A stretch of 58,220 nucleotides of DNA from Girardia tigrina (Eukaryota): contig MQRK01254974.1 in assembly GCA_001938485.1 (NCBI GenBank), positions 1-58,220 of the forward strand, in the 5' to 3' direction. The notes under the pieces are model-generated. The model was not told where the DNA came from and made no database searches. It saw only the letters and a program-made list of their open reading frames with translations. Of this stretch, positions 4,916 to 55,327 are shown one piece after another; the first letter of the stretch is position 1, and each line of letters starts with the position of its first letter. The position numbers and the translations under genes were made by a program.

Positions 4916-5716
4916 ATTGTAATAATAATGTATTAATTCCCAGACTCTACATCTGAGAAAAGAAAAAGGTCTGTTTTGTGAGTTTAAAAATACATACTTC
5001 AAAAAAATAATCACATTTCAAATTTTTTTTACGATAATTGTTTTGTGAATAAGAGTGAAAAAGGAGAAAACCGCAAAAAAATTAATTAAGAATTAATACA
5101 CATTTGTTTGCTGAATCAATTTGTGTATAAATACATTTAACACGCTCAAATAATTTTATGTCCAAATTCAATTTTTTAACAAAAAATTTTCGGCTATTTT
5201 CAATTTCCAGAGTCTTCTTACTGTCATTTTATTTTATTTATTTTGAACCTGCACTTCCATCAGATCGTTTATGCCATCGAATTAATCGATCGATTGATTT
5301 TCTATGAGAATCATTACTTTGAGATTATTCGATCAAAAATGAGGAAAATAAGAACTCTCGTTTAAGGATACCTGGGATGTTCACCGAGAATGTCGAAACA
5401 TTGTTTGTCATTCGTGATGTTCGGTTGGGAAATGTATTTTTCCGGATATTTGTAATCGGAATTGCATCAATCAATCACGAAAAAAGATCAAATAATTGTC
5501 GAACCGATGAAAGAATCACCGCTGTTTATTAATCAGAGAAAATAAAATAAATTCTTGCTCATATTGAAAATGTTATTTACATCATTTATTCTATTTCTCC
5601 TGACGTGACATTGGACCAATTTATTGTTGATTCAGAATTCTCCTGCATTGCCGACATTCTCTGTTGCATAGATTATAGCAAAATTCGGCGAAATAAAATT
5701 ATTGGTTGACTGGCAC

Positions 5717-6253
5717 TGTGAGGAATATTTTAAATTTGGTATGTTGAAATTGGTTTGTTGAATTTTGTATGTTGAGTTTAGTATTTGGAAATGTGTTTCT
5801 CCCACCCAGATGGAAAATTGATATTTTGGANNNNNNNNNNNNNNNNNNNNNNNNNNNNNNNNNNNNNNNNNNNNNNNNNNNNNNCAGCATAAGATATATA
5901 AAAACATTAAAAATATTAAATCTTTTCAAATCTTCATATTAAAATTTAAATAAAATAAATAGTTTTAACTAAGTTTTGAATTAAATAAATGTTCTTTCTT
6001 TACTTAAAATAATTTTTAAATAAAATTAATATGTAAATAAAATAATACTAAAACTACAAAATTTGAACTTTAAAAATAAAATCTGAAAATAATGAAAAAT
6101 TTGTTCGAATAATTACTTATTAAAAATCATTAACTAAAAATTATCAATTTAGAACGATGTCGAATGACGAGAGTTTTGCTGAGAGTTGTCCAAAAGACAA
6201 TTCTGATTGTAATGAAAATAAAAGTTCGAAAACCCATGTTGGTGTTCTTAATA
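5717..6253 (+). mobile_element. Solo LTR of the 12273-17538 gypsy family, with 5-bp TSD GGCAC
   Basis: Runs TGTGAGGAAT...GGTGTTCTTAATA and matches the LTRs of the full element. GGCAC flanks it at 5712-5716 and 6254-6258. Contains an N-gap. Confidence 0.93.
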
Positions 6254-7084: not shown

Positions 7085-7530
7085 ATTGTCGAACACGGGT
7101 CAGTCGAATGGATTTTGAAAAATATTCCGAAATTTTCAAAAGGAAAATTTCTAAAGATTTAATGAAATAATAACGGCAGTCGATGTAAATATCGAAATTG
7201 TTAGGGTAGGCTTGTATAACGACAATATTTATATCATTAATCGTAAAACTAATTTAATGAAAATGTTTTGCTAAAAAAAGATTGTGAGGTATGCCAATTG
7301 AAAATTATTCGCATTGTCGGATTCATTTATATTTTGATGAGTTCGTTAACGGATTTTTGGTTTTCCATGAAATGAGTCAGTTTGTTATTCCTGGCGAACA
7401 TAAAGCTGCCGTTTCTTGTATGACATGGAGTAAAAATGCAGAAAAGCTTTTTAGTGGAGATATTTTTGGATTTGTTTTTTGTGTGGAAATTAATTATAAG
7501 AATAAAACAGTTTCTACATATAAAATTTGT
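7085..7530 (+). pseudogene. TECPR2: TECPR2/HPS5-like N-terminal WD40 gene fragment (frameshifted)
   Basis: EWILKNIPK..., ITAVDVNIEIVRVG...IYIINRK and FVIPGEHKAAVSCMTWSKNAEKLFSGDIFGFV resemble the TECPR2 motif FDVTGIHKNSITALAWSPNGMKLFSGDDKG. Several frameshifts and stops; no introns seen. Confidence 0.6.
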
Positions 7531-7689
7531 AAAACAGCATCGTTAATCGAAAAAGGCAATGAAACGTATAAATCGAAGAATTTTTTTGTCGTTTTGGATC
7601 ATTATAATAAAGCTTTCGAACTTGATCCAAAATTTTTCACATTTTATACTTACGTCGCAGCTGTGCATCTCGTTGGAAAAGAACATTAG
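7531..7689 (+). pseudogene. STIP1: STIP1/Hop (Sti1) TPR2A-like fragment fused in frame to the WD40 fragment
   Basis: IEKGNETYKSKNFFVVLDHYNKAFELDPKFFTFYTYVAAVHL aligns by eye to the Hop sequence [42 protein letters not shown]. Confidence 0.65.
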
Positions 7690-7954: not shown

Positions 7955-8660
7955 CAAAGTGCCAAAGAAATTTTAAATAGAAATCAGTAGATAAAAAGCC
8001 AAAAGATTAGAGATCGACATTAAAAGGGATAAGATGGAACAAGTTAAGAGTTTTAAATACTAAGGCCCTACTATCACAAAGAATGCAGGAACCAAAGAAG
8101 ATATCAGAAGCCGGATTGATATTGAAACAAGCGCTATGATTAAGCTTAGCTTAGTTTTTGAATTTTAAAGAAATCCATCTCAAGAGCAGAATAAAGATCA
8201 CCAAGGCTAGTGTCTGGGTAACACTCTTCTATGGATGCGGAGGTTGGGCAATAAATCAGAAGAGCGTGGATAGACCTAAAACATTTGAAATGAAATGCTG
8301 CATGAGAATGCTGAAGATCACGTGGAAAGACAAGAAGACCAATGAATTTGTCTGGAGAAGAGTGACAGAAATACTAGGTATAATATATGAATCATTAGAA
8401 GAGACCATCAAGAGAAAGAAGCTGAAATTTTACGGACATCAAATAAGAAAACAAACACTAACAAAAGATATGATTGAAGGAAGAGTGGAAGGAGAAAGAC
8501 TAAAGAGTCAATGGACAAACGATTTAAAAGAAAGGAGTGTATTAAACACGGAATATCTTAACAAAGAGGCTACAAATAGAGAGATGTGGCGAAGGCTTGT
8601 GTATAATTGGGTGCACACAAGGCTTAAAGGCTAAGGTTCAAAGGAATGAAGAAGAAATAT
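7955..8660 (+). mobile_element. RTE-clade LINE 3' end (post-YADD RT and C-terminal domain)
   Basis: Motifs EQVKSFKY, TLFYGCGGW, FEMKCCMRMLKITWKDKKTNE, KLKFYGH, IEGRVEG and NREMWR, followed by a gaa-type tail. Confidence 0.88.
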
Positions 8661-9932
8661 ATATATTGAAAGATATTGTTCTTTATTAATTCATTCACTT
8701 ATTTCAGTTTCCTGAAAATATTTCAGTATTTATAAAACATTCTATGTTTTTAATTTTATAACTTATATGAAATAAATTTACATTTGACAAAAATAAAATT
8801 CTAAGTGATAAAGAGTCAAGTGACGAATAATGTATTAATACTCAGACTCAACATCTGAGGAAAGGAAGAGCTCTCTGAGACTCCTGGTAAATCAAGTTTG
8901 CAGCTGCAAATGAAACAAAACTACTTTCAAATACGTAAAGAAACATTTTGTAATAACAAGACAGAAATTTCGATCTTGTGAAAATAAGATTTTTGTCTTA
9001 AAATTTGTTTAATTTCGTTCTTATTTAAATATATTGAAATCATCTTTCACCTGTACAAAACAAAATCTTTTCCATCACAATTTATCATTACGACCCACGA
9101 AAGAATTTGAATTACAACATTTGCAATAAATCTATTTTTAATTTTATATTTCCAAACATTTCTAGATTCATGATTAATTGTCAATAAACCCTGCAGGGGT
9201 CGAGGTCGTATTGATGCATTGCTTATTAACACTCACTTAAATAAATTGAAAGAAAATTAACAACGACAAATAATATACACTTAAAATTTATTTATTTTAA
9301 ATTAAAAATTGAAAAGCAAATAAACGTAAACATGTAAGAAATCGACTTGTGTCTATTTAGTCAACCGCTACCGCGGCTTGATTAATAAGTTTTGAGTATT
9401 TTCAACATTGCAGATTTGAATTTTTAAGAGGAATCGTATCTCGTCCTTTGAGTTTTGTTCGTCATTTTCCCATGTCTCATGGATTTTTAAAGCAGTCCCT
9501 ATAAAAGTGACTTTATGCTTCATTAGTTGGAAAACAAAGCCAATTCTTTACCTCTTGCCACACCACTAAGTCTACAACCTTCTTCTATTGCTATCAGCCG
9601 GATGTGGTTTGTTGATAATGAACCTGCCTCATATGTTGGTCTCATATATGCAGTTTCTATGTAATTAATTGCCAACAAGCTTGGAAAATTTGACTCTCAG
9701 TTCTTTGAAAGCCTTATTTGCTAAGTTGGAAAAAATTCAAATTAAATATAAATAAACCTCAGGGGTCTGGTTTTCTATATATGCTAAATGGTTTGAGCAT
9801 GCAAGTAGATTTATTATTTCATAACACCGATTTCCTCACTTATCATTTGTAAATAGTGCGGTTACTTGTTCGACGATAGCAGTTATCAGTCAAGATTCTC
9901 GTGATCGTCGGGTTTAAAGTACAAAAATGATA
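8590..9932. repeat. Segmental duplication, copy A (copy B at about 28238-29572): RTE tail plus a multi-exon pseudogene on the minus strand
   Basis: Colinear near-identity between the two blocks. Both carry the exon LISNASIRPRPL...FVLYR followed by GT, and RI.FVFQLMKHKVTFIGTALK. Confidence 0.92.
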
Positions 9933-10595: not shown

Positions 10596-10998
10596 ATGTC
10601 TTTTCAGATGCATTTTATTCATCTGATTCTTCTTTTATGCGTTACTTCTGCGTGGTGTAAGTCGATCTGCTCGAATCCGAATCACCCATATAAAACAGAA
10701 ACAAATTCCGATTGCGCCGATTTCAGCAGAATCTGTCTCAAGCAAAGTGAGTAAAATATTTTTAATTATTTATCTATTTGTTTCATCCTCAGATGATCCT
10801 CAATGTGTAAATTTTCTGAATATTTGCTCTCGTAAGCTTTTCATGATTATCACTATTATTGGTACTATCTATCTTCCGTTACATTTACAGAGTGTCCTCC
10901 ATCTGATTATGTTGCCATCAGTAATTTAGATTCATTTTAATTAATTAATTAATAATTATTATTTGATTCAGTGTTGAAGGACATTGCTAAACTAGGCG
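10596..10998 (+). CDS. Micro-exon gene paralogue 1, 5' part: signal peptide plus Cys-rich domain (probably disrupted downstream)
   Basis: Exons 10596-10746, 10793-10831 (39 nt), 10891-10920 (30 nt), 10972-10998 (27 nt). GT-AG introns of 46, 59 and 51 bp, all phase 1. Splices to MSFQMHFIHLILLLCVTSAWCKSICSNPNHPYKTETNSDCADFSRICLKQNDPQCVNFLNICSQCPPSDYVAIMLKDIAKLG. TATA-like ctatataaa at about 10515. Confidence 0.72.
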
Positions 10999-11067
10999 GT
11001 TAGTGTGTTATTATTTTTTGCTTAAAACATTCTTTTAAGTGTTTGCTTTTTTGAGTTTTGATTTGAT

Positions 11068-12040
11068 TATTAAGAACACCAACATGGGTTTTCGAAATTT
11101 TATTTCCAATACAATCAGAATTGTCTTTTGGACAACTCTCAGCAAAACTTTCGTCATTCGATATCGTTCTAAATTGATAAATTTTAGTTAATGTTTTTTA
11201 ATAAACAATTATTCAAACAAATTTTTCATTATTTTTAGATTTTATTTTTAAAGTTCTAATTTCTTTATTCTTTCCGCATAGTCCTTCCAATACCTTTGAA
11301 TATTTTGCATAGTCTTCTAAGAATTTCCTGTAATAATTCGTTAAACCTAAAAAGCTTATCAAATGTTTTACACATGAAGGATTCTGAAACTTGCTAATCG
11401 AATCGATCTTTGTATAATATGTTTCTATGCCATCTCTGCTGATCACATATTCAAATAACTTTGTCTTTTCCACCAAAAAATGACATTTATCTGGATTAAT
11501 TCTCGGACCCGATTGCTTTATTTTATTGAAAACGTGTCCATTTTGTTTGAGGTGTTCTTCCTTGTGTTTTGCGAAAATTAATATATCGTCTAAATACACA
11601 ACTGCTTCTTTCCAACTTAATTCACCCAAAACTCTTACCATCAGTTCTTGAAACGTTGCTGTGCCGCTAAAATTCCAAATGGTATTCTCTTGAAACAGTA
11701 TTGACCATCCTTTGTTGAAAATGCTGTTTAAATTTTTGATTCATCTTCAAGTTCCACTTGATGGTATGCGTTTCCAAAATCGATCTACACACACTCGAAT
11801 GTCCTGTTTCTCTTTTTCCCAAACACAAACTAGAGGGAAATTCCACGGTGAACTGCATTTCTCTATAATATCGTTTTCTTCATATTTTCGAATAATATTG
11901 TCCAGTTTTTCCTCGAAATGTTTTGGTTGTCGATAAGGTTTCACTAAAACTTGTTCTCCATGTGTTTCGATCTTGTGTTTGGTCAATGACATTCTTCCAA
12001 TATCCCATTTGTCGGCCGAAAATATTGATTTAAATTCTGT
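11068..12040 (-). mobile_element. Inverted, internally deleted gypsy copy: RT fragment joined directly to the LTR 3' end
   Basis: 11240-12040 matches 14530-15410 in reverse (SSPWNFPLV, YLDDILIF). 11068-11240 is the LTR terminus ...GGTGTTCTTAATA. Confidence 0.9.
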
Positions 12041-12712
12041 TTTTTAAGGGTTCTTTTTGGTGAACTGAAAATTCTTGATATTTTTAAATTAAAAATCATA
12101 ATTATATTTAAGATAAATTAAAAAATATTATTTTACTAATTAAATTGAAAGAAATTATATATAAAAAATTTAAGTTTTTTAGATAATATTTATACTAATT
12201 AAAATGAAATAGGTTTTGTAAAAAGTATAGTGATAAGTTATAGTATATAGATAATATTTTATTAATTACAACTGTGAGGAATATTTTAAGTTTGGTATGT
12301 TGAAATTGGTTTGTTGAATTTTGTATGTTGAGTTTAGTATTTGGAAATGTGTTTCTCTCACCCAGATGGAAAATTGATATTTTAGATGTTCACGATAGAT
12401 AATTATTCGAATATAATTTACATTTTAAAGTACAACATAAGATATTTAAAAACTTTAAAAATATTAAATCGTTTCAAATTTTCATATTAAAATTTAAATA
12501 AAGTAAATAGTTTTAACTGAGTTTTGAATTAAATAAATGTTCTTTCTTTCCATAAAATAACTTTTTAAATAAAATAATATGTAAATAAAATCATTATTAA
12601 AATTACAAAATTTGGACTTTAAAATTAAATCTGAAAATAATGAAAAATTTGTTCGAATAATTGTTTGAATTTGAATAAAAAAACATTAACTAAAATTTAT
12701 CAATTTAGAACG

Positions 12713-13750
12713 ATGTCGAATTACGAGAGTTTTGGTGAGAGTTGTCCAAAAGACAATTCTAATTATATTGAAAATAAAAGTTTGAAAAGCCATGTTGGTG
12801 TTCTTAATATGGCGACACACAACCACCTGATTCCGAACATCAGAGGTTCGGAGATTTTTGATGGATCAGAAACAAAAGTTGAGGCATTCATAACGAGCTT
12901 TAACAGGTATGCGAAGATAATGGGATCTTTCGAGGAGTAGAAAATCTTATTAGTAACACCATATATGACTCCGGATGTCATAATAAAATATGAAGCAGCG
13001 GCAGGTGAAACATGTGAAGAGAAACTAAGATCCGCATTTTCAAAGGAAAAATCTATCCTGGATCTAATGAAGGAATTGGTAGAAATGAGAATTGGATCCA
13101 GCGATCCAACAGTAATATTTAGAAAGGATGATGAAATCATTGAAAAATTAATTGAGAAAAAGTTGGGTAAAAAGGAACTATCAAATTTGGTCTACGCTAA
13201 TCTGATAGATGACAACATCGTACAGAAAGAAATAGCTGTTAGAGGTATCAAGAAATCTGAAGAGATTGAAGACATTCAAACGAGAATGTTCGAATTTGAT
13301 AAAAAGAAAAGAAATGCTCCTGTAGCGGCATATAACACGAAAAGAGAAAATGAATGGAGAACAGTGGAAAATAAAAAAAGAACACCAAGACCACAGAACA
13401 AGAAATTCATAGAACAAGAAACAAGAAGAAATTTTAAAGTTCAAAAAATTACCTGTTGGATATGCCACGAAGAAGGGAATGTTAGAAGACAGTGCCCTAA
13501 CGTGGAGTGTAGTCATTGTAATGGAAAAGAGCATTTAAGAACACAGTGTTATGAAAACCCTAATAGATTTAGGGAGCGTGATCAATGGAAAAGGGATAAG
13601 GGAAATGGAACAACAGAAAAAATTACTCGAATAAACGGTATAGAGAACGGCCAACACACATGAATATGAAATACCCAGTAGCAGAAGTGGACGAACTAGA
13701 TGATGAATTGTACATAAGAGAAGATTCTAGAAAAGGGGACTATTCTGAAT
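12713..13750 (+). pseudogene. gag: gag of the gypsy element, with two CCHC-type knuckles
   Basis: The frame opens at ATG 12713 inside the LTR and has a premature TAG at 12938. Knuckles CWICHEEGNVRRQC and CSHCNGKEHLRTQC. Confidence 0.85.
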
Positions 13751-13835
13751 AAACGTATAGAAAAGAAAATGACAAAAGACTGGAATATCCTGTAGGCAAC
13801 AGAAAATTCAGAAATGATCAGGGAAACGAGGACGC

Positions 13836-16800
13836 ATGATCACAGGGAGAAGTGATCAATGTGCTACAATAGGATCTCAATGTAGGTGTATGATTGATTG
13901 TATGTATGGATATGTTTGTGATTGTATGTTTGATGATGTGTTTGAAAATATTCCTTTGGAGAGATGTAGATTAGATAATGAACCTGAAGAAGACGATGAA
14001 ATATGTGCTAATATCGATATAGAAAATGAGAAAAAAATAAAAAAGAATACTGAAGTTATATTGATATTACTGAAGTTTAACATAAATTATAAAGAATTGA
14101 AAGGTAGACCAACTATAGAGTTCCAAATAAAGATTAAAAATGTCAAATTCCTGTTAGATACAGGAGCTCGAGTCAACGTTATTAAAGCAGAGATAATTAA
14201 AGATATGAAAGATGTCAAGATCAAAGAAACTAAAAGACGAATACATTGTGCAAATTATTCAGAACTTATAAATTATGGGATTGTTCAATTTAAAGTGGTA
14301 ATTGAGAGAATGTAGAAAACAGTGGATTTCTTCGTGGTCAAAGATTTAAATCCAGAAATGATTGCATGAATAGATTTCTTGGACAAATCCAGGATTAAGT
14401 TAAAGAGAGAACCATCAAATACGAATGAGTTACTGGTAATACAAGACAATCCATCAGACGAGGATAGACTAAGGAGAATAAAAGAGCTGTTTAAAAACAA
14501 AATTGACAGCCAACTAATGGAACTTTCAACAGAATTTAAATCCATATTTTCGGCCGACAAATGTGATATTGGAAGGACGTCATTTACCAAACACAAGATC
14601 AAAACGCATGGAGAACCAGTTTTATTCAAATCTTATCGACAACCAAAACATTTCCATGAAAAACTGGACGATATTATTCGAAATTATGAAGAAAACGATA
14701 TTATAGAGAAATGCAGTTCACCGTGGAATTTCCCTCTAGTTTGTGTTTGGGAAAAAGAGAAACAGGACATTCGAGTGTGTGTAGATTTTCAGCAATTGAA
14801 TAAAATCACCGTTAGACCTGAATTCCCAATGCCAAATGTTGAGGAAATGTTGAATACTCTAAATGGAGCAAAGTATTTTAGCACAATCGATTTGGGAAGC
14901 GCATACCATCAAGTGGAACTTGATGATGAATCAAAAGTCAAAACAGCATTGTCAACAAAAGATGGTCAATACTGTTTCAAGAGTATGCCATTTGGAATTT
15001 TAGCGGCACCAGCAACGTGTCAAGAACTGATGGTAAGAGTTTTGGGTGACTTAAATTGGAAAGAGACAGTTATGTATTTAGACGATATATTAATTTTCGC
15101 AAAACACAAGGAAGAAATCCTCAACGAATTGAACACGTATTTAGTAAAATGAAGCAATCGGGTCTGAGAATTAATCCAGATAAATGTCACTTTTTGGTTG
15201 AAAAGACAAAGTTTTTGGGATATGTGATCAGCAGAAACGACATAGAAACAGATCATACAAAGATTGATGCGATTAGCAAGTTTCAGAATCCTTCAGTTGT
15301 AAAACATTTGAGAAGCTTTTTAAGTTTAACGAACTATTACAGGAAATTATTAAAAGACTATGCAAAGTATTCAAAAGTATTGGAACGACTATGCGGAAAG
15401 AATAAAGAAAAAAAGCTAATATGGACGGAAGAATGCAACGAAGCGTTTCAAAAATTAAAGGAAAAGATGATCAATACACCAATACTGGCATACCCAGATT
15501 TCGGAAAAGAATTCATATTGGACACGGACGCTAGTTTTGACACCATTGCGCGGTGCTGTCACAGAAAGATATATTTGGAAGAGAAAGAGTGATTGCATAT
15601 GGATCCCACAAAATGAACAAACATGTATCGGGATACTGTAGTACGAGAAAAGAACTGCTGGCAATCTACTATTTTACACAACACTTCAAGCACTATCTGT
15701 ACGGCAAGAAATTTCTATTAAGAACGGATCATAAAGCCATTACCTTTATGATGACGACAAAGAACCCAATCACTCTGCAATTTCAAACTTGGATAAATTT
15801 TCTAAGTGGGTTGGATATGACAATAGAATACCGGAAAGGTGAAAAACACTCTAACGCCGATGTGATGTCTAGAAATTCCTGTGTAATGTGTGTACAATGT
15901 CAAACTATGCATGAGGAAGCTAAGAAAGGTAAAGTTAAAACAAGAATCCAAGCGTTAGACGATGAATCCAAAGGATTCAAATGGCAGAAAGATAATGACG
16001 AGATAAAACAGATTAGATCAGATATCAAAACTGGGAAAACAAAGAAATGGTTACTGAAAGATGATATCGTAACGACAATGGATAACAAATACTGGATTCC
16101 GAAAGTTAAAAGGACTTAATTCGTGGAAGAAATACACAAGATGCTGTGTCACGCTGGTAGCAAGAAAGTTTATAATTATTTGAAAAATGATTTCAATATG
16201 GAAGATATGAGAAAAACGGTAAAGGAAATTGTGCAACGTTGTATGAATTGTCAGAAAAGAAAGACCTTAAGAAGAAAAAAAAGAGAAACATATTAAACAA
16301 TCTGCTGATGAACCATTCCAAAAAATATATATGGATTTCTGCGGACCTTTTAAAAGAAATATTAATGGATGTCAATACATACTAGCGATAATCGATCAAT
16401 TTAGCAGATACATCAGTTTGAACGCAGTAGCTCATCAAGACGAGAAAACAGTGCGAAAGGTATTACTAGACAAATGGATTTTGAAATATGGACCACCAAA
16501 AGAAATGACAATAGAGGAAAAACATCCGATTCAGCCCTTTTTAAAGAAACATCAAATAGATTTAAAGCTGAGATAGTATATTCCAGTCCTCACCACCACA
16601 ATACCAATGGGATTGTTGAGAGACAATTCAGAAAAATTAGGGATGCCATGAATATACGGATGAAAGACGAGGTCCACAAAGATTGAACGGAAATCTAGCC
16701 AAAAATAGTTTATGCTAAATAGCACAATTCAGGTAACCACAGTGATATCTCCAGCAGAAATAATTTTTGGTAGAAAACTAAGACATTGGTGGAAAAACAC

Positions 16801-16990
16801 CGATGGAAAAAGACATGTCGAGAAGGAAAGCACGACACAAACGAAACGAGTATTCAGAATTGGAGATAAAGTGCTTATAAAGAAAGAAAACATAATGAAA
16901 GATGAGGATCGATATATGGGCCAAGCCACAATAAAGAACCAACGACATGAATAGTGATCAGAAATGTGGAATGGCTAAAGCCATTTAAAT
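13836..16990 (+). pseudogene. pol: pol of the gypsy element (protease, RT, RNase H, integrase), with frameshifts
   Basis: FLLDTGA (PR); SSPWNFPLV, MPFG, YLDD (RT); DTDAS, KELLAI, RTDHKA, NADVMSR (RH); H-x4-H...C-x2-C, MDFCGP, IIDQFSRY, NGIVER (INT). Confidence 0.93.
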
Positions 16991-17615
16991 CGAGGGGGAT
17001 GGGATGAATATTTTAAATTTGGTATGTTGAAATTGGTTTGTTGAATTTTGTATGTTGAGTTTAGTATTTGTCAGTTTTAGTATTTGTGTTTCTCCCACCC
17101 AGATGGAAAATTGATATTTTGGATGTTCACGATAGATAATTATTCGAGTATAATTTGCCTTTTAAAATACAACATAAGATATTTAAAAAACTTTAAAAAT
17201 ATTAAATCATTTCTAATTTTCATATTAAAAATTTAAATAAAGTAAATAGTTTTAACTAAGTTTTGAATTAATTAAATGTTCTTTCTTTACGTAAAATAAT
17301 TTTTAAATAAAATTAATATGTAAATAAAATAATACTAAAACTACAAAATTTGAACTTTAAAAATAAAATCTGAAAATAATGAAAAATTTGTTCCAATAAT
17401 TGTTTATTAACAAACATTAATAAAAAATTATCAATTTAGAACGATGTCGAATGACGAGAGTTTTGCTGAGAGTTGTCCAAAGACAATTCTGATTGTATTG
17501 AAATAAAAGTTTGAAACCCCATGTTGGTGTTCTTAATAAGTATCATGATGATAATTTTTATTTTGAAGGGTTCCCTAATTTAAATAATAACAAATAAAAA
17601 TACTTTAATTTTTAG

Positions 17616-17867
17616 ATAAAAGTGTAATCCACGTACTGCTATTCCTTTTGACAAGTTTATATTGATTCACATAAACAAAATTAAAATTATTTAGTAGTAA
17701 ATCTGATCTGTATTGGAACATTGTCAATTGTATTAGTATACAGAATAACACCAATCAGTGAGTATTTTATTATAAATATAAATTTATTAAATAATTATTA
17801 ATTATATTTATAAATTTTTTATTTTATATTTACAGAGACAAAAATGTTTAATATTATTTTGCAATGA
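17616..17867 (+). CDS. Probable 3' exons of micro-exon paralogue 1, separated from the 5' part by retroelement insertions
   Basis: AG/GT-bounded exons 17616-17632 (17 nt; one more A would give a symmetric KKCNP exon), 17695-17757 (63 nt, phase 1-1, VNLICIGTLSIVLVYRITPI) and terminal 17836-17867 (KTKMFNIILQ*). The layout parallels the last two exons of paralogue 2. Confidence 0.5.
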
Positions 17868-21170: not shown

Positions 21171-21609
21171 TAAATCAAAACTTGAAAGCCAATTAAAAAT
21201 ATTTATTATTTTCGACGGTTTAACCGTAATCGTCAGAACAAATGATTTTTCAAACGAAATTTACTTATATAGTGCAGTTATTGATTATGTAATCAATACG
21301 TAATCAGTACATCATTTAAAAACTCTCAATAAAGTTGTAGAGAGTGCAGTTTCAAACTGCACTCCACTATTGATTTTGAATATCCAATATATATATATAA
21401 GATCTTTGGATCCTAAAATTAACGTTCAAACTGCACTCTCAACAACTTTGTTGATAGTTTTTAAATGATGTACTGATTACATATTGATTGCATAATCATT
21501 AACTGCACTATATAAGTAAATTTCGTTTGAAAAATCATTTGTTCTGACGATGACGGTTAAACCGTCGAAATTAATAAATATTTTTAATTGGCTTTCAAGT
21601 TTCGATTTT
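21171..21609. mobile_element. Penelope-like inverted terminal repeat pair (about 180-bp arms), each arm with a hammerhead ribozyme motif
   Basis: Arms 21171-21352 and 21428-21609 are near-perfect reverse complements. CTGACGA-T-GACGG-ttaaa-CCGTC-GAAA lies at 21544-21570, with its inverse at 21210-21236. Confidence 0.75.
21541..21593 (+). ncRNA. Type I hammerhead ribozyme-like motif (Penelope pseudo-LTR type)
   Basis: Conserved CUGANGA and GAAA boxes, stem II GACGG/CCGTC, stem III ATTAA/TTAAT. Stem I is weak. Confidence 0.55.
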
Positions 21610-22815
21610 AATAACTTGCCAATTTTATTTCAATTTATTCACGATTTTAAAAAAGTAATAAAATTAAATGAAACAATTAAATATTTTAAAGTGTTATCGT
21701 AATTTAAAATTGATTTATAGAAGAAATGAAAAAATCAAATATGAATATTTATGCGTATTTTTATCTATATCGGTTTAAGATTTATAAAACAAATTGTTTC
21801 TCAAAAAAAATAATAAATTTGTATAAATATTAGACTTAAACATTTTTTGTGGTATAATAAAAGTTTTAATGTCTGCTACTAATAATTCCGACAATGTTCC
21901 AAGAACCACTAATATAAGTCAAGTGTTTTTTTCATTTATTTATGAGGCTAAAATTAAATAATACATATGCCGGGAGGAAAAACGATCGAAGGAGAAAAGA
22001 TACGGCCTCATGGAGGATAGAATGTTCGTAACCATAAGTATAATGAATCCTAAGAAAACAGAAACAGCTTTAAATAGAGACACTTCAAAATGAACGATCC
22101 AGTTTTTTTCAGGTGCACCAAATCCTCATTTTAAAATGACTACGAAACTCACCTGACAAGATTCACCTTATTAAAGATTTTGGTCAATTATTATGATGAA
22201 GTGAAAATATTGCAATTAATTTTGCACGAAGTGCTTGTAATTTTTGGATAACTCTGGTAGTATCATACACTTACTTAAATCATTAATTAATAAAAGTTTT
22301 ATTTTTTTAATATACATGATAAAAATTATATTATTAATCTAGAAACAAAGAAGAAATACAAAAAGAACATTGAAAAAGGTTGGTTTACATTTTATATATG
22401 TTAATTTGAAAATATTTTAATATCTTTATTTCATTAAAACTATTAATAACTAAATTTTCCTTTTTCTCATTTTACTTTTATATATTTCCAACTTTGTCAG
22501 AGCATGTGTACTTGTATTAAGTAACGGAATCAAAAAATGTATCATTTTTTATTTTCATCTCAAAATCCGAATAAGTCAGCGTTCACAATCAAGTCAATTG
22601 AGTAATGTTCTTGACAACTTACTGTGTAGTGAACGTAGACCTTCGTTCATGTAGCAAAAAAAAATTTTATTTAATAAACCCATCATCGCTCAAAATATTA
22701 TGTCAGGAATCCAATAAGTTATACTTCGACAATTTTTGCATGTCATATTCAGGATAACATAAATTATGTATATTTATGACAGAAAAAGACTATTTATTCA
22801 AAAATATATTGTGAA

Positions 22816-27754: not shown

Positions 27755-28237
27755 TATATATATCTCCACTTATTTTAGTTACATTAGAAAAATCTATAAG
27801 CTGATTTCCCATTGTTTTTCTGTGACGCATCCAACCGGATCACTAATCATTAGTCTGGTTTTCTGGTTTAGTCGAAACTGGTAATTCATTTTACATGGTA
27901 CTCTTGCCGACGAATTTCCATCAAACTACCGGCACCCAAACCACTTGCATTGCGAGTTCACCCGATAAATGTTTAGTAAGAGACTAAACAGGGAACTCTG
28001 CATTTGTACAAAAAATTCCATGTGACGATTTCGGTATCACTCATTGGTGCTCGACCAGAAAAATACTTATTGACATTGAATGATTTGACGATTCATTGTA
28101 TTCATAAATATCTGATGTCTATTGTGTTCCTAATAAACATTATTCATCTCTTCGTCTAGTTATTCCAATAACGTTAATGGAAGAAAAGATTATATTCAAT
28201 TTCTCCTTTCCATTACAGCTACAAATAAAGAGATGTG

Positions 28238-29572
28238 ACGAAGGCTTGTGCATTATTGTGTGCACACAACGCCTAACGGCTAAAGTCGAAAGGAAAGAAG
28301 ACGAAGAAATATATCTTTGAAAGATATTATTGTTCTTCATTAATTTATTCATGTATTTCTATTTTGTCTAAAAACGTTTTAGCATTTATAAAACATTTTA
28401 TGTTTTCAATTTTATAACTTATATGAAATTAATATTTGACACAAATAAAATTCTAAGTGATAGAGTGCAAAGTTATTATATGTCAAAGTGATAAAGAGTC
28501 AAGTGACGAATAATGTAATAATACTCAGACTCGACATCTGAGGAAAGGAAGAGCTCTCTGAGACTCCTGGTACATCAAGTTTGCAGCTGCAAATGAAACA
28601 AAACTACTTTCAAATACGTAAAGATACATTTTGTAATTACAAGACAGAAATTTCAATCTTGTGAAAATAAGATTTTTGTTTTAAAATTTGTTTAATGTCG
28701 TTATTATTTAAATATATTGAAATCATCTTTCACCTGTACAAAACAAAAACTTTTCCATCGGAATTTATCATTACGACCCACGAAAGAATTTGAATTACAA
28801 CATATGCAATAAATCTATTTTTAATTGTAACTTTATAAACATTTCTAGATTCATGATTGATTGTCAATAAACCATGCAGGGGTCGAGGTCGTATTGATGC
28901 ATTGCTTATTAACATTCACTTTAATACAATTAAATTTTTTTGCAATCTAAAATAGAAAAACAAATAGATATAAACATGTAAGAAATCGACTTGTGTCTAT
29001 TTAATCAACCCTAAAGCGACTTGATTAATAAGTTTTAAGTATTTTTAGGATTGCATATTTGAATTTTTAAGAGGAATCGAATCTCGTCCTTTGAGTTTTG
29101 TTTGTCATTTTCACATGTCTCATGCGTTTTTAAAGCAGTCCCTATAAAAGTGACTTTATGCTTCATTAGTTGGAAAACAAAGCAAATTCTTTATCTCGTG
29201 TCTTCAGTCATTGCCACACCAATAAGCCTACAACCTTCTGTTACTACCAGCCGGATATTGTTTGTTGATCATGAACATGTCTCATATATAGTGTTTCTGT
29301 GTACTTAATAGCAAACAAGCATAGAGAATTTGACTCTTTCAGTTCTTTGAAAGCAATATTTGCTAAGTTGGAAAAAATTCAAATTAAATATTAATAAACC
29401 CCAGGAGTCTGGTCTTCTGTATAAGCTAAATGATTTTAGCATGCAAGTAGACCAATTATTTCATAACACCGATTTCCTCACTTATTATATGTAAATGGTG
29501 TAGTTACATGTTCGACGATAGCAGTTATCAGTCAAGATTTTCGTGATCATCGGGTTTTAAATACAAAGATGA
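28238..29572. repeat. Segmental duplication, copy B (of 8590-9932), ending at the R2/NeSL-like fragment
   Basis: Colinear with copy A. Similarity stops at ...caaagatgat (about 29572), where LINE sequence begins. Confidence 0.92.
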
Positions 29573-31110
29573 TGCACCTCGATGGAGCAAAAATAATGCG
29601 GAATCTGTTGGCACTTCATCACTGCATCCTATAATTTGAAAACAAGGAGAAAGCGACTGTATCATGTACTTATCCCATATAGATTTCCTGCTCACCCCTC
29701 CATTTTCTTTCAGGGTGTACACATATGTATTGGATGCATTCTTTGGAAGTTCAAGGACTTTCTTCTGAAACAGCCTAACAATGTTGTCTAGGCTGTGTCT
29801 GGTTCCATCCAGAGTACTATATGGGAGGAATAAGATACGGAATATGAAGATGAGTTTGGAGGGTAGATACACCAGATACGCCTGCAACTTCTGCCAAGGG
29901 AACAGGATTGATGTCGCTATTGTCTCTGTGTCTTTGAATATTGTTGCAAACGTTTCCGTTGGTGTGACCTAGATGTTATTAGAAAAGTGTCCCTCAAGGT
30001 ACACTACAAATTCACCCTCACTTATCTCGGAAATTTTCTTTATATAGATTTCAATATCTTGATTTGCTTTATGGGGAAGTACAATATGCGCACTTGCTGG
30101 GTCTGAATTTGATGCCTAAAACGTCTCTTAGTTCCACAGCTTTGTCAACAAGTGTTTGCATAAATTATTTAGTGCTAGCAAGAAGCACAAGATCATCAGC
30201 ATACGCTAAGCAACTAACCTTGTTATTGGCAATCATTAATCCTCCCTGTCTCCATCCATCCAATCCAATCAAAACACGGTAAATTGCTATGTTAAACAGC
30301 AACTTAGAGAGAGGACATCCCAGTCGAATTTCAACAAGGATGGGGATCTGATCCGTCACTGTGTTGCCACATTTGTAAGCTAATGAGCATTCCTTAAAGA
30401 ACATTCTGAAATGATTACATAATCTTTCTCCTACACCCATTCTGCGCCAGAGGCACAATACTGCATCCATCGACACAGAACTAAATGCATCTGATGCATC
30501 TAGCATCGTTGCATGGAACGGCATGTACATTTCGTTTTAGTATCTGTCTTGGATCGCTCTAATGAGAGAGTTGTGCTCCGCACAACCATCATACGGTCCC
30601 AGAATTTTCTGCAATGGGTGCAGAAGATCATGCTCTTTGATTCAACTTTGGTCGCTCACGAGTACCGCAAGTATCTTATACGCGCATTCCAAAAGGGGAT
30701 TAGTCGTCACGATGCAACCTCTCAATATTGCCACCGTTTACCTGGTTTTGGTAGCCGAACTGTAAAGAATTGTTTCCAGCTCTCGGGGACAATGTAGGAT
30801 TCTATGATTCTATTGTATAGCGTTGTAAAAATAACTCCCACTGGATCACAATATAACAATGTTACATTATATGTTACATTCGAATATCCCGTGGCTGAGC
30901 TATTTGCTTTCTCTAATACCGCTATCACTTCACCCGTCTGGATTTCTACGAAATCGAAAGAGCTGCCGAACTTGACTTCTAGGTCCTCTACTTGTCGGTC
31001 CATCACTGGCGAAATGGATTTAGTAGAAAAGTGATTCATAATATATTCGGTAGATGGTGCGGTATCTGCAATTGTTCTATCCAGAAGAGTTTGTATGACT
31101 TTTTTCGGAG
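29573..31110 (-). mobile_element. RLE-type (R2/NeSL/Utopia-like) non-LTR retrotransposon RT fragment
   Basis: VPESWK...LPKPG, LDASDAFSSVS, IRLGCPLSKLLFNIAI and CLAYADDLVLLA, with frameshifts. Confidence 0.8.
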
Positions 31111-35600: not shown

Positions 35601-36209
35601 TTAAGTGACTTTTATGTTACCTGATGGTGCAAGAGCGGGCGCAGCGATTTTGTGGCTGCGGCACGCCAGCGACGGGGAGCGAACATCTGGTCGGGGGGTC
35701 ACATTTAAAATTTTCACCTCGAGACTCGGATTGATGATGATCGTATCGACTCTCCGTTTGACGACCGCACATTGACGAATCGCGTCATCGATTTCCCGCG
35801 AGTTATTCGATCGATTTTCTGCGAATTCAATTTCGACTCTCTGTTTCTGTTTTAAATCGATTAAAACTGGATCGGGAAAAAAAAGCGATCCTTGGATGAG
35901 TCTATCGACGATAATCGACTCCCATAGAAAGCGAAATGCGAACAAACAACCGATCGGTTGTCGGAGATCGGTGCGACAACACAACCAACCGCAATCGATT
36001 AATTCTCTCACAATTGCGTTATCGATTTCGGAATTTTTGATGCAATTAATCGAACAAAAAAGAACTTTCAAAGTCGATAACAAATAATCGGAATTGTTTT
36101 TGGAAATCTCTTTCCATTTGGTCAAAGAAATTGGGTGGAAGTTCAAATGATCGAAAAGTTTCACGAGAATGGAAAAAATTTTTGAAAGAAATTCATTGTT
36201 ATTATTCAT
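35601..36209 (-). CDS. 202-aa ORF; N-terminal about 160 aa resemble TEDC1 (tubulin epsilon/delta complex 1), C-terminal about 40 aa probably read through antisense hAT sequence
   Basis: ATG-initiated with coding-like composition. ISLTKWKEISKN...LKVLF...IVRELIDCGW...CLFAFRFLW resembles TEDC1 SPEIFRRAKFD...LWQLLF...LVKSALCSQGY...LLLALSWLL, judged by eye. Confidence 0.4.
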   Translation of the reverse strand: MNNNNEFLSKIFSILVKLFDHLNFHPISLTKWKEISKNNSDYLLSTLKVLFCSINCIKNSEIDNAIVRELIDCGWLCCRTDLRQPIGCLFAFRFLWESIIVDRLIQGSLFFPDPVLIDLKQKQRVEIEFAENRSNNSREIDDAIRQCAVVKRRVDTIIINPSLEVKILNVTPRPDVRSPSLACRSHKIAAPALAPSGNIKVT

Positions 36210-38670: not shown

Positions 38671-40750
38671 TGGCGACTTCACACCACGTAAAGGTTCTGA
38701 AACATTTGATGGATCCGAGCACAAATTAGAAGAATTCCTGATAAGTTTTAACAGGTATTCAAAGATTATGGGAGTATCAGAAGAGAGGAAAATCCTACTG
38801 GTAACACCATACTTGACTCCAGATTCGATTCTGAGATACGAGAAGGCCCTATGGACTACTTGCGAAGAGAAAATGCGAGCAGCATTTTCAAAAGAAAAAT
38901 TTATTTTGGATTTGATAAAAGATCTCATAGAGTTAAGAGTAGGTTGCGGTGACCCATTAATTGCGTTTCGCAGAGCAGATGAGATAATCAAAAATTAGTG
39001 GAGAAAAAATTGGTAAGAAAGAACTATCAAACTTGGTCTATACTTATATGATTGAGGATGATAACGTCTATCAATAGATAGCGATTTGAGGTGTAACAAA
39101 AGCAGAAGAGATCAAAAACATACAAATGAGGATGTATGAATACGGGAAAAAATATAAGAAATTTACCTATAGCAACATACAACTAAAGGAAAGAAAACGA
39201 TTGGAAAACTGTGTAGAATAAAAGAAGAAAACCAAACCAAGGAAAGAAGAATTAAAGAGAGAAGGTACAAGTCGAAACTATAAAGCCAGAAAAATAATTT
39301 GTTGGACATTCAATGAGGAAGGTCATGTTAGAAGAGAATGTCCGAACAGTAAGTGTAACCACTGTCAAAGAAGAGGCCATACACGAACACAATGTTATGA
39401 AAACCAAAATAGGTTTAAAGAACGTGACCAACGGAAATGGGACAATAATAGAAATCGTTGGATTGACAGAGAGATTATTCTAATCAAATATACAGAGAGC
39501 AACCGGCATATATGAATAAGGAACAACATTTTGCGGAGTTAGACGACAGAGATGATGAAATGGACAGGAGATCGGAAATTTCTGATCGAAGAGAAGAGAA
39601 TACAGCAAGAGATTATTCTAGAGGTAAAGGAAGATACATACATGTAAATGTATGTTCGATTGTATGTATGAATGTGTTTGTGATTGTATGTTTGATTTTA
39701 CGTATGAAAACATTCCTCGAGAGATTTGCAAACTTGAACCTGAAAATATTAGAAATCGAGAACAGTGTAATAGTATAAAAACTCAAGATGATAAGATACT
39801 AAATCGTAAAATGGAAATATTGAAGCTATAAAAGTTTAAGATAAATTATAAAGAACAGAAAGGACTTCCAAGTGTGGATTTTTACGTGAAAGATAGAAAA
39901 GTTTGGACACTGGAGCCAGAGTAAATGTAATTAAAGCGGGATCATTAAAAATATGAAAGATATTAAAATTAGAGAAACGAAAAAACGTATCTATTCCCAA
40001 ATGATTCAGAACTAATCAATTAAATGTGCCTTTTGATGGAACACAAAAGTTAATAGAGTTTTATGTGTTCAAAGAACTAGACCCCAAAATGATTGCAGGT
40101 ATAGATTTCTTGGATAAATTCGGAATAAAATTGAATAGGCAAATACCTCGACTTAGTAAAACGGTAAAAGATTTTAACTAAGTACTGATCATAAGGCTAT
40201 TACCTTTATACTGAATACGAAAAATTCAAAAACACCGCAATTTCAAACGTGGATAAATTTTCTTAGTAGTCTGGATATGAGAATGGAATATCGGAAAGGA
40301 GAAAAACACTCAAATGCAGATGCAATGTCGAGGAATTCTTGTGAATTATGTAGTCAATGTCAAACAATGCACGAAGAAGCTAAGAAAGGAAAAACTAAAA
40401 TATGAATCTTGGCTTTAGACGAAGAATCAAAAGAGTTCAAATGGCAGAAAGATAATGACGAAATAAATCAGATCAGAGAAGATATTAGAATGGGAAGAAC
40501 AAAGAAATGGATACTGAAAGACAATATTGGGACAACAATAGATAACAAATAATGGATTCCAAGAACCACAAGGATAGAATTCGTGGAAGACGCTCACGAA
40601 ATGATGTGCCATGCTGGTAGTAAAAAGGTTTATAACTATTTGAAAACTGATTTTGATATGGTTAATATGAGAGAGATAATTAAGGAAATTGTAAAATGTT
40701 TCATAAACTGTCAAAAGAGAAAGACTTTAACCACAAAAACGAAAGAAAGT
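38671..40750 (+). mobile_element. Internal region of a related gypsy element (PBS, gag, PR, RT deleted, end of RH, start of INT)
   Basis: tggcgac PBS; ETFDGSE...FNRYSKIMG; DTGARVN. The sequence jumps to TDHKA at about 40185, followed by HEMMCH...CFINC. Confidence 0.88.
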
Positions 40751-40755
40751 TATTT

Positions 40756-42875: not shown

Positions 42876-43234
42876 CCAATAATAAATAAATAGTATAATA
42901 AATAAATTTTATAATTGTTTTGTTCTTTTTCTATTTTAGAGTTGAAAATTTTAGATCAAATAACGATTAAAAATTTTTTTATTATGTCAAAATATGGTCA
43001 AAAAATGATCTATAAAGTCAAAAAATAAGATCAATTTTTTACATTTTTAAAGAAAAAAATCACCCTAATTATAACATTTTCCTGGTCAATGTATTGTAAA
43101 AATGATTAAGTTGATGTGTCTAATTGAAATATACATTAATCAAACAATTCAATTGTAAATGGTTCCAAAATGACATCATAATTATTTTTTAGTTTTTTAT
43201 AAGAATTCAAAGAATTAACATTCAAAATGCTCTC

Positions 43235-43430
43235 TCGGCAACTTTATTGAGGGTTTTTAAATGATGATGACGTATTGATTACATAATCAACACCGGCAAT
43301 ATATAAGTCATTTTTTAAAAAAATGCAGTTGTTCTGAAGATGACGAATAATCCGTCGAAATTAATAAACAATTTTAATTGGCTTTCGAATTTTGATTTTA
43401 ATGAATTGTCAATTTTTTTCAAATTAATTT
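43235..43430 (+). mobile_element. Third copy of the Penelope-like terminal repeat with hammerhead motif (43334-43360)
   Basis: Aligns to 21435-21640 and contains ctgaagatgacgaataatccgtcgaaattaataaa. Confidence 0.7.
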
Positions 43431-50480: not shown

Positions 50481-50484
50481 TGTA

Positions 50485-51086
50485 CGAGGGTTGTCCCAAA
50501 AGTTCACGGACTGATAAGTAACAACAAATTCAAAAAGTTCATTCCAGTTAACAAAATTGATCAATCCTCATCAAAATCGCTATCTAACTTTTGAATCTAA
50601 TCACCATTCAGTTTCACACACTTTCACATCTGTCAAGAAGAATGACTTCCTCGATAACTTTCACATTTTCTTGACATCCAGACGCTATTGGTCGCCCCCT
50701 GCGTTCATCATCCTTCAATGATTGACGCCCTGCCTGTAATCGTTGCAACCACTTAAAGACAGCCGTTTTTCCCATAGCGGCATCACCAAAGACGCGGTGT
50801 AAACGGTGCACAATATCTGCAGTGGGGGTGTCTTGCTTCCAGAGGAAATAGATGATTGCTCGTTGAGATTTCACTGCTACTTCCATACTAACTACAAGAG
50901 AGAAAAATGACAAATTAATACATTCGTATGTCACACACATGCCGACGGGCAGCCAATGAGAGTTCACCTCAATTACAATTGGTTTGTTCCCCCTCATGTC
51001 ATCGTACACACACTGCGCGTTACAGTCACGCACACAAGTGACAACGTCATATTCTCTCAGTCCGTGAACTTTTGGGACACCCCTCG
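50485..51086 (-). mobile_element. Internally deleted mariner with intact 30-bp TIRs and TA TSD; keeps the N-terminal HTH ORF
   Basis: ta-CGAGGGTTGTCCCAAAAGTTCACGGACTGA ... TCAGTCCGTGAACTTTTGGGACACCCCTCG-ta. ORF contains QRAIIYFLW...VFKW...LKDDERRGRP. Confidence 0.93.
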
Positions 51087-51890
51087 TATGAATGAAAAAA
51101 AAATAATATTATTTTGCGGGTAATTCATATATTTTAACCATTTGAATGTGGTGAGCAATATTTTTCTTATTTTGAAATTAATATATCATGCATTCAAGGT
51201 TAATAAAAACTCACATTCTTGCTTCATCAAACATATAAATATCCCAAGACATAATACAATGCAAATCAGAATTAATACTAAAATGAATTTAATTTTTTAT
51301 AATCAAACAATATATAAACTTGTTAGTGAAATGAGCGATATTTTAATCCAAATATTTATATCTAAATAATAAAGTACGGTAATTAATTGAGTATATTAAT
51401 TATAAAATAAACATAATAAAAAATTGCATAATTATAAACATAATAATCCAGCTTTATTCTATAAAGAAATAAAGAAGTTCATAAAACAGTCTCATAATTC
51501 TTTCAAGAAGATTTGTTTACTTATTTAATCAGATTTATTCTTCTTATTTATTCTTTTGATTGAAATAAAATTATCATTCAAACTAAAAGGAAATGCAAAT
51601 ATCATTGTCAAACAAAACAAGAATTTCTGAATTTCATCATTATTAAAATATCATTTACCTTTTTTTCTAACGGGGCAGTAATGACCACAGTAAACAAAAT
51701 ATAGATTTAAATTTACAATTGTCTTAGGTTTATCAAACAAATTAGTTTTTAATAATAATTATATTTATTTTAAATGCATAAAATTCACCTGCCAGCTTCT
51801 CTAGACTTTTTTGTAGATTAATTTTGTCATCTAAATTGTAAATAACATTCAGTTTTGAAATAAAATATATGACAAATCACTTATGTTTTA

Positions 51891-54200: not shown

Positions 54201-55327
54201 TTATGAAAATAGAGATTCATCTGTTTGAAAATTATTTTTATTTTTTCTGTGTATTAACATACTTAAATATTTATAAATTATAATTTTAAAGCGTTGGATA
54301 ATGTCGTCAGTTTTGAGAATAGTATCACGTACTGAAATTGAAAGCATGTTCGGCATAAAATCTCCAATGTCATTAGAATTGTTTTAAAATTTTGCTTACA
54401 AATATTTATCTCAAAGATATTAAGAGAAAATTAAATATAAAAAATTATTACAAATTATTTTTATTAATTTCTTTAAATAATTTTATTTGTGTATTATTAT
54501 TAAATATTTGAAATGAATTCCTAATTTTAATATTAAATGGGAACAAACAATTATCTGGAAATCGTCCTTGGTAACAGATGTTTTGTTACATAAAGTTGAC
54601 GCACTCCATATATCTTATTATTTATTATTATTTTATAACTTATTTTTTTATTATTCTTAAATTGTATCCCTGCTAAAGGGGTTAATATTTTAGTTTCAAA
54701 TATTGTTACAATTGAGTCATTTTAGCATAACAAACATTATATTAATGCATAAATTATTTTCTAAATAATTTAAAATTACCTTTGTGATGTTCATCAACAT
54801 TTTTCTTGATTTCTTAAAACAAATTGTCGATCAATTAAATATAATAAATAAATAATAAAATTCCTTCACATTAAGTACTTCGTCTAAACAAATTAGTTCG
54901 AGTGTGTCTTAATTTTATACTGGTAAATTACCTTTTAAATTATCTAAAATTTCAATAAGCACTGAGTAACACAAATAAATAATGTAATTATATTCATTAT
55001 ATATTCTTACAAAATAAGGTGTAGTTACTCGGAGGACATTCTATTTAAAAATAAAGTAAAATAGTTTATTAAAAATATGATACGTTTGCAGGCCGTCTGT
55101 AACAAATTGCAATCTTCATTACCTGGAAAGACACTTAGATGTAATCATACTAAAAGGTATCAACCTTTTACAAAGCAAATATCCTCAAAGGTTGCACATG
55201 TTGAATCTGACGTTCTGAAAGGATGTGAGAGAGCACAAGTTGTTTTTGGCTGCTCTGCCAATAAATATGAGATTTTTTCAAATGAAAATAAAAATAAATC
55301 CAAAGAAAAAATATTTAAAATTCCCAT
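54201..55327 (-). CDS. Micro-exon gene paralogue 2 (Cys-rich; middle exons and exact 5' end uncertain)
   Basis: Exons 55327-55165, 55122-55084 (39 nt), 55040-55029 (12), 54943-54932 (12), 54883-54870 (14), 54812-54780 (33), ..., 54331-54263 (69) and terminal 54220-54201, all GT-AG. Reads MGILNIF...LLAEQPKTTCALSHPFRTSDSTCATFEDICFVKGNEDCNLLQTACKQCPPNNLKDEVLNKSRKMLMNITK...RDTILKTDDIIQRFKIIIYKYLNESLFS*. Confidence 0.68.

What the first reader, a model, noticed from the sequence alone, without database searches (positions are those of the whole stretch)
10596..10998. Hidden family of secreted Cys-rich proteins built from symmetric micro-exons (paralogue 1)
Seen in sequence: a signal-peptide exon is followed by exons of 39, 30 and 27 nt. 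Each is a multiple of 3, each is flanked by phase-1 GT-AG introns of 46-59 bp, and they splice into one open frame. A second locus 44 kb away on the other strand independently gives the same motifs with the first two introns at equivalent positions: CSNPNHPYKT/CALSHPFRT, CADFSRIC/CATFEDIC, a 39-nt C-x6-C exon, QCPP/QCPP and MLKDIAK/MLMNITK. Established: schistosome micro-exon genes encode secreted proteins from symmetric tiny exons that can be skipped without frameshift. Inference: this may be an unannotated MEG-like system for varying secreted or surface proteins. I recognise no known family for the protein.
Basis: partly seen in the sequence, partly recalled or inferred. Interest (0 to 1): 0.9.

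Follow-up and report, generated by a model that had tools for sequence, protein, structure and literature searches.

The report
Expanded micro-exon TNF-receptor-like membrane family
This is one of roughly 55-60 unannotated genes, probably in a planarian flatworm, that stitch tiny in-frame exons into a small cell-surface protein; it most resembles single-domain TNF receptors and could supply the missing receptors for the hugely expanded planarian TRAF signalling proteins, although that relationship is not proven.

Summary
The exon chain is real. Exons of 39, 30 and 27 nt with phase-1 introns recur across about 100 genomic matches (roughly 55-60 genes, extrapolated), show purifying selection, and database proteins read across the same junctions. 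After a 6.6-kb retrotransposon-filled intron, paralogue 1 has 39- and 63-nt exons encoding a transmembrane helix; paralogue 2 has a matching 42+63-nt pair. The products are therefore single-pass membrane proteins (signal peptide, one six-cysteine domain, helical stalk, membrane helix, tail), not secreted ones. The MLKDIAK/MLMNITK match uses a wrong frame. Two language-model searches rank Grindelwald, TACI/BCMA and Fn14 first, the predicted hairpin-plus-two-helices topology fits, and this genome has hundreds of TRAF-domain candidates. But those scores are lead-level (0.76-0.80), and Pfam, PDB and fold searches found nothing, so TNF-receptor kinship is about 50%. The scan probably noted this family before on another contig (s1-711181).

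The parts
10596..10746 (+). Paralogue 1 exon 1: start codon (10596 or 10608), signal-peptide-like leader, cysteines 1-3 of the ectodomain; phase-1 donor
   Evidence: same donor position in 57/57 loci
10793..10831 (+). Paralogue 1 exon 2, 39 nt, phase 1-1, cysteines 4-5 (C-x6-C)
10891..10920 (+). Paralogue 1 exon 3, 30 nt, phase 1-1, cysteine 6 (QCPP)
10972..10998 (+). Paralogue 1 exon 4, 27 nt, phase 1-1, start of helical stalk
11067..12041 (-). Inverted partial copy of the LTR retrotransposon inside intron 4
   Evidence: self-BLAST
12270..17538 (+). LTR retrotransposon inside intron 4 (LTRs 12270-12809 and 17000-17538; RT and RNase H in separate ORFs); Ty3/gypsy-like by domain order (inference)
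17616..17654 (+). Paralogue 1 exon 5, 39 nt, phase 1-1, first half of the transmembrane segment (predicted)
   Evidence: present downstream on the same strand in the allelic contig C193426
17695..17757 (+). Paralogue 1 exon 6, 63 nt, phase 1-1, second half of the transmembrane segment (predicted)
   Evidence: this exon-pair pattern occurs exactly twice on both strands of the window, once behind each paralogue
17836..17867 (+). Candidate terminal exon, about 10-residue tail then stop (uncertain)
   Evidence: strong acceptor score
22343..22378 (+). Alternative candidate next exon, 36 nt, symmetric, lysine-rich juxtamembrane-like (uncertain)
55165..55327 (-). Paralogue 2 exon 1 (leader less signal-peptide-like; cysteines 1-3)
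55084..55122 (-). Paralogue 2 exon 2, 39 nt
55011..55040 (-). Paralogue 2 exon 3, 30 nt
54932..54961 (-). Paralogue 2 exon 4, 30 nt, true counterpart of paralogue 1 exon 4
54780..54812 (-).
51789..51830 (-). Paralogue 2 stalk exon, 42 nt (predicted; 42-nt stalk exons also in L014, L022)
51320..51361 (-). Paralogue 2 first transmembrane exon, 42 nt (predicted)
51215..51277 (-). Paralogue 2 second transmembrane exon, 63 nt (predicted); tail exons beyond it unresolved
50483..51088 (-). Mariner-type transposon remnant in the intron after the transmembrane exon of paralogue 2
   Evidence: terminal inverted repeats; Pfam HTH_48

Best explanation
A lineage-expanded family of type I membrane proteins whose single six-cysteine ectodomain is a divergent version of the one-domain TNF-receptor fold (Grindelwald/BCMA/TACI/Fn14 class). 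Shown: the exon structure, the family, purifying selection, and the signal-leader / Cys domain / stalk / transmembrane layout at sequence level. Inferred: the Cys domain binds an extracellular ligand, receptors cluster, and long-tailed members recruit TRAF adaptors (stress, immune or cell-survival signalling), while short-tailed members act as decoys. Diversity comes mainly from gene duplication and from gain or loss of symmetric stalk exons between paralogues; because every internal exon is phase 1-1, skipping of stalk or transmembrane exons could in principle give shorter or soluble forms, but none was observed here.
For: Membrane topology. Two independent ESM Atlas queries rank Grindelwald, TACI-CRD2/BCMA and TNFRSF12A clusters first. 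The AlphaFold2 model shows a short N-terminal hairpin then two helices, the topology described for Grindelwald, Fn14, BCMA and TACI (PMC8024323). P0016 has a tail with a PxExxE motif at 192 that fits the TRAF6-binding pattern (one case only, pattern from my own knowledge). This genome has 833 TRAF-MATH candidates, 150 scored all at E<1e-30, in line with the planarian TRAF expansion (PMC6109357). dN/dS 0.2-0.5 over the Cys exons.
Against: Atlas scores are 0.76-0.80 with 127-139 shared features; the tool calls anything under 0.9 a lead. Pfam TACI-CRD2 and BCMA models hit neither the proteins nor the loci. No PDB sequence match to any TNF receptor at E<=10 and no fold match (the model is weak, pTM 0.38). 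Cysteine spacing (C-x12/14-C-x6-C-x7-C-x6-C-x2-C) differs from the C-x3-C...C-x3-C helical module given for Grindelwald. No TNF ligand was found (an uninformative exon-by-exon search). Tails of the two window genes could not be resolved.
Confidence: 0.5

Rival explanations
1. A planarian-specific family of single-pass surface proteins of independent origin (recognition, adhesion or self/non-self markers) whose ectodomain is a twin C-x6-C helical hairpin that arose by internal duplication; the TNF-receptor resemblance is convergence of small Cys-rich domain plus membrane helix.
For: No profile, PDB or fold match. Exon 2 repeats the end of exon 1 (consensus CANFSDIC versus CDNFQNIC), which TNF-receptor domains are not known to show (own knowledge). 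Best Pfam hit is the Pneumocystis major surface glycoprotein repeat, just under cut-off (E 4e-4). Only three true homologues among 1.84 billion representatives.
Against: Both Atlas queries, one with the ectodomain alone, converge on the same receptor class; Grindelwald itself has very poor sequence similarity to other TNF receptors, so missing profile hits are expected.
Confidence: 0.37
2. A schistosome-style micro-exon system in which combinatorial exon skipping generates pools of variant secreted or surface proteins.
For: All internal exons are symmetric and under 70 nt; the models meet the operational MEG definition; MEG products can be membrane anchored (PMC4350168); skipping the two transmembrane exons would keep the frame.
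Against: No skipped isoform seen or testable. Exons 2 and 3 are invariant in length and hold three of six conserved cysteines, so skipping would break disulfides; all three database proteins include them. Only 15% of the paralogue-1 coding sequence lies in exons of 36 nt or less. Phase-1 introns are common in modular type I membrane proteins (own knowledge). dN/dS is well below 1, unlike the accelerated evolution reported for schistosome MEGs (PMC4350168).
Confidence: 0.1
3. The family is real but this copy (paralogue 1) is truncated or silent: the retrotransposon in intron 4 cuts the transcript, giving a short secreted peptide or a pseudogene.
For: A 6.5-kb nested LTR insertion begins 68 nt after exon 4; expression not shown.
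Against: The frame is open through six exons; the transmembrane pair is intact here and lies in the same order in the allelic contig; allele differences in exons 1-4 are 4 synonymous of 53 sites against 5 non-synonymous of 193. This rival concerns one copy and is compatible with the readings above.
Confidence: 0.15

Closest known systems
Single-CRD TNF receptors: Drosophila Grindelwald, vertebrate BCMA (TNFRSF17), TACI (TNFRSF13B), Fn14 (TNFRSF12A)
   Same: One short Cys-rich ectodomain, stalk, one transmembrane helix and a tail (P0016 is 244 aa); predicted hairpin plus two helices; nearest clusters by language-model features.
   Different: Six cysteines with different spacing in the helical half; internal repeat; no Pfam/PDB match; dozens of paralogues rather than one or a few (maximum 12 grnd paralogues in an annelid per 10.1101/2024.07.27.603686); coding region and even the membrane helix split into micro-exons; ligand unknown.
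Schistosome and cestode micro-exon genes (MEGs)
   Same: Signal leader followed by runs of small symmetric exons; multigene, transposon-rich surroundings; no homologues outside flatworm-like sources found.
   Different: Probably a free-living host; exons are larger (27-63 nt) and encode a disulfide-constrained domain under purifying selection; no sequence similarity to a MEG family was found in the searches run; skipping not shown.
Flatworm NGFR-like TNFR (SmTNFR group, PMC7519573)
   Same: Type I receptor with Cys-rich ectodomain in the same phylum.
   Different: Single-copy, four TNFR_c6 domains and a death domain; this genome has a separate TNFR_c6 locus on C221653 that is not in the family.
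Pneumocystis major surface glycoprotein repeat (PF02349)
   Same: Twin C-x6-C pattern scores 21 bits on P0015 residues 35-63.
   Different: Below the 22-bit cut-off, one member only, unrelated architecture; most likely convergence.

Membership tests
Single-CRD TNF receptor (Grindelwald/BCMA/TACI/Fn14 class) | Single-pass membrane protein with one short extracellular Cys-rich domain | tested here: met
   (sequence level, hydropathy)
Single-CRD TNF receptor (Grindelwald/BCMA/TACI/Fn14 class) | Match to family profiles (PF09305, PF09257, PF12191, PF00020) | tested here: not met
   these models are vertebrate-centred and several Grindelwald clusters also carry no common Pfam family
Single-CRD TNF receptor (Grindelwald/BCMA/TACI/Fn14 class) | Beta-hairpin plus helix-loop-helix fold | tested here: inconclusive
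   secondary structure fits but pTM 0.38 and no structural match
Single-CRD TNF receptor (Grindelwald/BCMA/TACI/Fn14 class) | C2-module cysteine spacing C-x3-C...C-x3-C (or C-x2-C in Fn14, own knowledge) | tested here: not met
   family has C-x6-C-x7-C-x6-C-x2-C against the consensus in PMC8024323
Single-CRD TNF receptor (Grindelwald/BCMA/TACI/Fn14 class) | TRAF-binding motif in the cytoplasmic tail | tested here: inconclusive
   one PxExxE in P0016; tails of the window genes unresolved
Single-CRD TNF receptor (Grindelwald/BCMA/TACI/Fn14 class) | Binds a TNF-family ligand | not testable with these tools
   PF00229 search found nothing and its control did not ring
Micro-exon genes (MEG) | At least 7 exons, half or more under 70 nt and divisible by 3, run of at least 4 (Olson et al. 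operational rule) | tested here: met
   predicted models: paralogue 1 has 5 in a row of 7 exons, paralogue 2 has 7 in a row of at least 8; no transcript confirmation
Micro-exon genes (MEG) | Most of the coding region in very small symmetric exons | tested here: inconclusive
   52% of paralogue-1 CDS in exons under 70 nt but only 15% in exons of 36 nt or less; the stricter 36-nt rule is from my own knowledge
Micro-exon genes (MEG) | Signal peptide; secreted or membrane anchored | tested here: met
   hydrophobic leaders in the aligned members, transmembrane exons; SignalP not available
Micro-exon genes (MEG) | Exon-skipped transcript variants | not testable with these tools
Micro-exon genes (MEG) | Accelerated protein evolution | tested here: not met
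   pooled dN/dS 0.19-0.52 over the Cys exons; stalk and tail not tested

The most novel reading that the evidence does not exclude
Planarians carry a previously unseen expansion of dozens of Grindelwald/BCMA-type TNF receptors that are the upstream partners of their hundreds of TRAF proteins, encoded as micro-exon genes in which skipping of stalk and transmembrane exons yields soluble decoys and length variants: a diversified invertebrate immune or cell-turnover receptor system, and a free-living counterpart of the parasite MEG architecture.
Probability: 0.2. Interest if true: 0.85.

Novelty: new variant of a known kind. Interest (0 to 1): 0.62.

Why it matters
Planarian TRAFs are greatly expanded and essential for cell survival and regeneration (PMC6109357, PMC7586133), yet the flatworm survey of TNF receptors reports a single NGFR-like receptor per species and includes no planarian (PMC7519573). 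A hidden family of about 55-60 small receptors, missed because its exons are too short for gene finders and profiles, gives a concrete, RNAi-testable candidate for what those TRAFs listen to. It also shows MEG-like gene architecture in a probably free-living flatworm, which bears on whether that architecture is a parasite invention. If the TNF-receptor link fails, it is still a large unannotated surface-protein family with an unclassified Cys domain.

Tried and rejected
As a precaution I then left that stretch and loci L031/L032 out of database searches; one later local pattern search of the window with a degenerate family consensus of exon 3 does match inside it. Negative results: Pfam on exon 1; homologue searches returned only the query; no encoding contigs on record; JGI metagenomes empty; PDB sequence and fold searches empty. 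The other 28 hits were set aside: most are long proteins with many short matched stretches, and the three I read (P0020, P0021, P0030) lack the cysteine pattern. Adding exon-2 rows to the folding alignment failed because they align onto exon 1. No contig looked human.

Full report
Setting. The window is one contig of a 1.43-Gb, 255,254-contig, AT-rich assembly. Introns in the family are mostly 42-90 nt and the genome has 833 TRAF-MATH candidates. Together with the reported planarian TRAF expansion (PMC6109357) this points to a freshwater planarian. That is inference; no tool named the organism.

Observation. Of 125 strong donors on both strands of the window, only 10747 starts such a chain. 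The second locus at 55327 on the minus strand shares the first three intron positions. One detail is wrong: its fourth exon is the 30-nt piece at 54961-54932, and MLMNITK is a phase-0 reading of the following 33-nt exon; the matching exon in L009 has a stop in that frame and is open in phase 1.

A large family. An exon-1 profile finds 104 matches in the assembly. The 57 loci examined (about 50 distinct places) fall into 28-30 groups at 90-95% identity, so roughly 55-60 genes by extrapolation; the assembly contains allelic duplicates. All 57 have a phase-1 GT three codons after the third cysteine. Wherever found, exon 2 has a 39-nt form and exon 3 a 30-nt form; exon 4 is 27 or 30 nt. Exons 2 and 3 were selected as open in phase 1, but independent of that, differences concentrate at third codon positions in that frame (1972/1426/2718 and 1248/1194/1979) and pooled dN/dS is 0.19-0.52. 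Three database proteins (P0015, P0016, P0025; source organism not shown, and possibly gene predictions rather than transcripts) read straight across the same junctions, including the split Gln codon before CP. The family is protein-coding and under purifying selection.

Not secreted. P0015 (120 aa) and P0016 (244 aa) have a transmembrane helix after the stalk; P0016 has a tail of about 90 residues. That sent me downstream. Paralogue 1 has a nested LTR retrotransposon from 11067 to 17538; just beyond it lie a 39-nt exon (17616-17654), a 40-nt intron and a 63-nt exon (17695-17757), both phase 1-1, that together encode a hydrophobic helix. Paralogue 2 has the same arrangement, 42 nt + 42-nt intron + 63 nt, at 51361-51215. 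A scan of both strands finds this pattern exactly twice, once behind each gene and on the right strand, and the allelic contig carries it in the same order. The stalk differs between paralogues by whole symmetric exons: 27 nt in paralogue 1; 30+33+42 in paralogue 2; 30+33 in L009; 30+42 in L014 and L022. The tails are unresolved: paralogue 1 either stops in an exon at 17836 after about ten residues or continues through a 36-nt lysine-rich exon at 22343.

What the ectodomain is. Pfam, PDB sequence and fold searches give nothing significant; the folded model is weak (pLDDT 71, pTM 0.38), so those blanks are not strong. ESM Atlas features for full-length P0016 rank two Grindelwald clusters, two mollusc clusters (one with TACI/BCMA domains) and TNFRSF12A on top; the ectodomain of P0015 alone ranks TACI and BCMA domains among named clusters. 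Scores of 0.76-0.80 are leads only. The model has a short hairpin followed by two helices, as described for Grindelwald, Fn14, BCMA and TACI (PMC8024323). Against kinship: the cysteines of the helical half are spaced C-x6-C-x7-C-x6-C-x2-C rather than C-x3-C...C-x3-C, exon 2 looks like a duplicate of the end of exon 1, and the Pfam TACI and BCMA models do not pick out the loci. I therefore say it most likely works like a single-domain TNF receptor (0.5) but do not file it as a member.

Mechanism. Shown: gene structure, family size, selection, membrane topology at sequence level. Inferred: ligand binding by the disulfide-bonded head, often N-glycosylated just after it (sequon in 14 of 19 distinct exon-3 peptides), spacing from the membrane set by stalk exons, and signalling through TRAFs in long-tailed members (one PxExxE motif in P0016; TRAF expansion in this genome). 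Short-tailed members could be decoys. Since every internal exon is phase 1-1, skipping of stalk or membrane exons would keep the frame, but skipping exon 2 or 3 would leave cysteines unpaired.

Comparison with MEGs. The predicted models meet the operational rule used for Hymenolepis, and MEG products can be membrane anchored. They lack evidence of skipping, are less finely divided and are not fast-evolving in the part tested. Notes from this scan report symmetric small exons in other membrane proteins of this genome (s1-691890, s1-703732, s1-707462; unchecked by me), so the layout may be common in its surface-protein genes rather than special to this family. A note on another contig (s1-711181) lists the same 39, 30, 27 nt series and is probably another member.

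Limits. Joined models were used only in local scripts, not in searches. Paralogue 3' ends outside the window could not be fetched.

Verdict. Literature searches found no description of the family in planarians. New variant of a known kind; interest 0.62.

Noticed in passing
whole assembly: 833 TRAF-MATH candidates; the 150 scored all have E<1e-30, many in long intronless frames. One lies 8 kb from a family member on C196443.
   Followed up: no
G000:C221653:38044-38136: The only TNFR_c6 match over cut-off in the genome, probably the canonical NGFR-like receptor; not in this family.
   Followed up: no
window 10713-10736 and 10793-10831: Exon 2 repeats the C-x2-F-x2-I-C motif at the end of exon 1 across the family, suggesting an old internal duplication.
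   Followed up: partly
contigs C239698, C193446, C191147, C218527, C218689, C103080: Each carries two family members; on C239698 they are a divergent pair about 2 kb apart.
   Followed up: no
window 17836-17867 and 22343-22378: Two candidate exons after the membrane helix both begin K-T-K; one ends in a stop, one is symmetric. Could be alternative short- and long-tail forms.
   Followed up: partly
window 5715-6253, 11067-11262, 12270-12809, 17000-17538, 47840-48384: Five copies or pieces of one LTR at about 88-98% identity in both orientations; a related older element at about 38692-41317.
   Followed up: no
window 21172-21608 and 43213-43455: Palindromic MITE-like element of about 440 nt with a second partial copy.
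   Followed up: no
window 7291-7689: Exon of a beta-propeller gene with weak HPS5/IFT140 Pfam hits upstream of paralogue 1.
   Followed up: no
window 35601-36209 (-): 202-codon ORF without a Pfam match, probably an exon of an unrelated gene between the two paralogues.
   Followed up: no
window 8569-9931 and 28218-29573: A 1.4-kb direct repeat at 83% identity, not identified.
   Followed up: no
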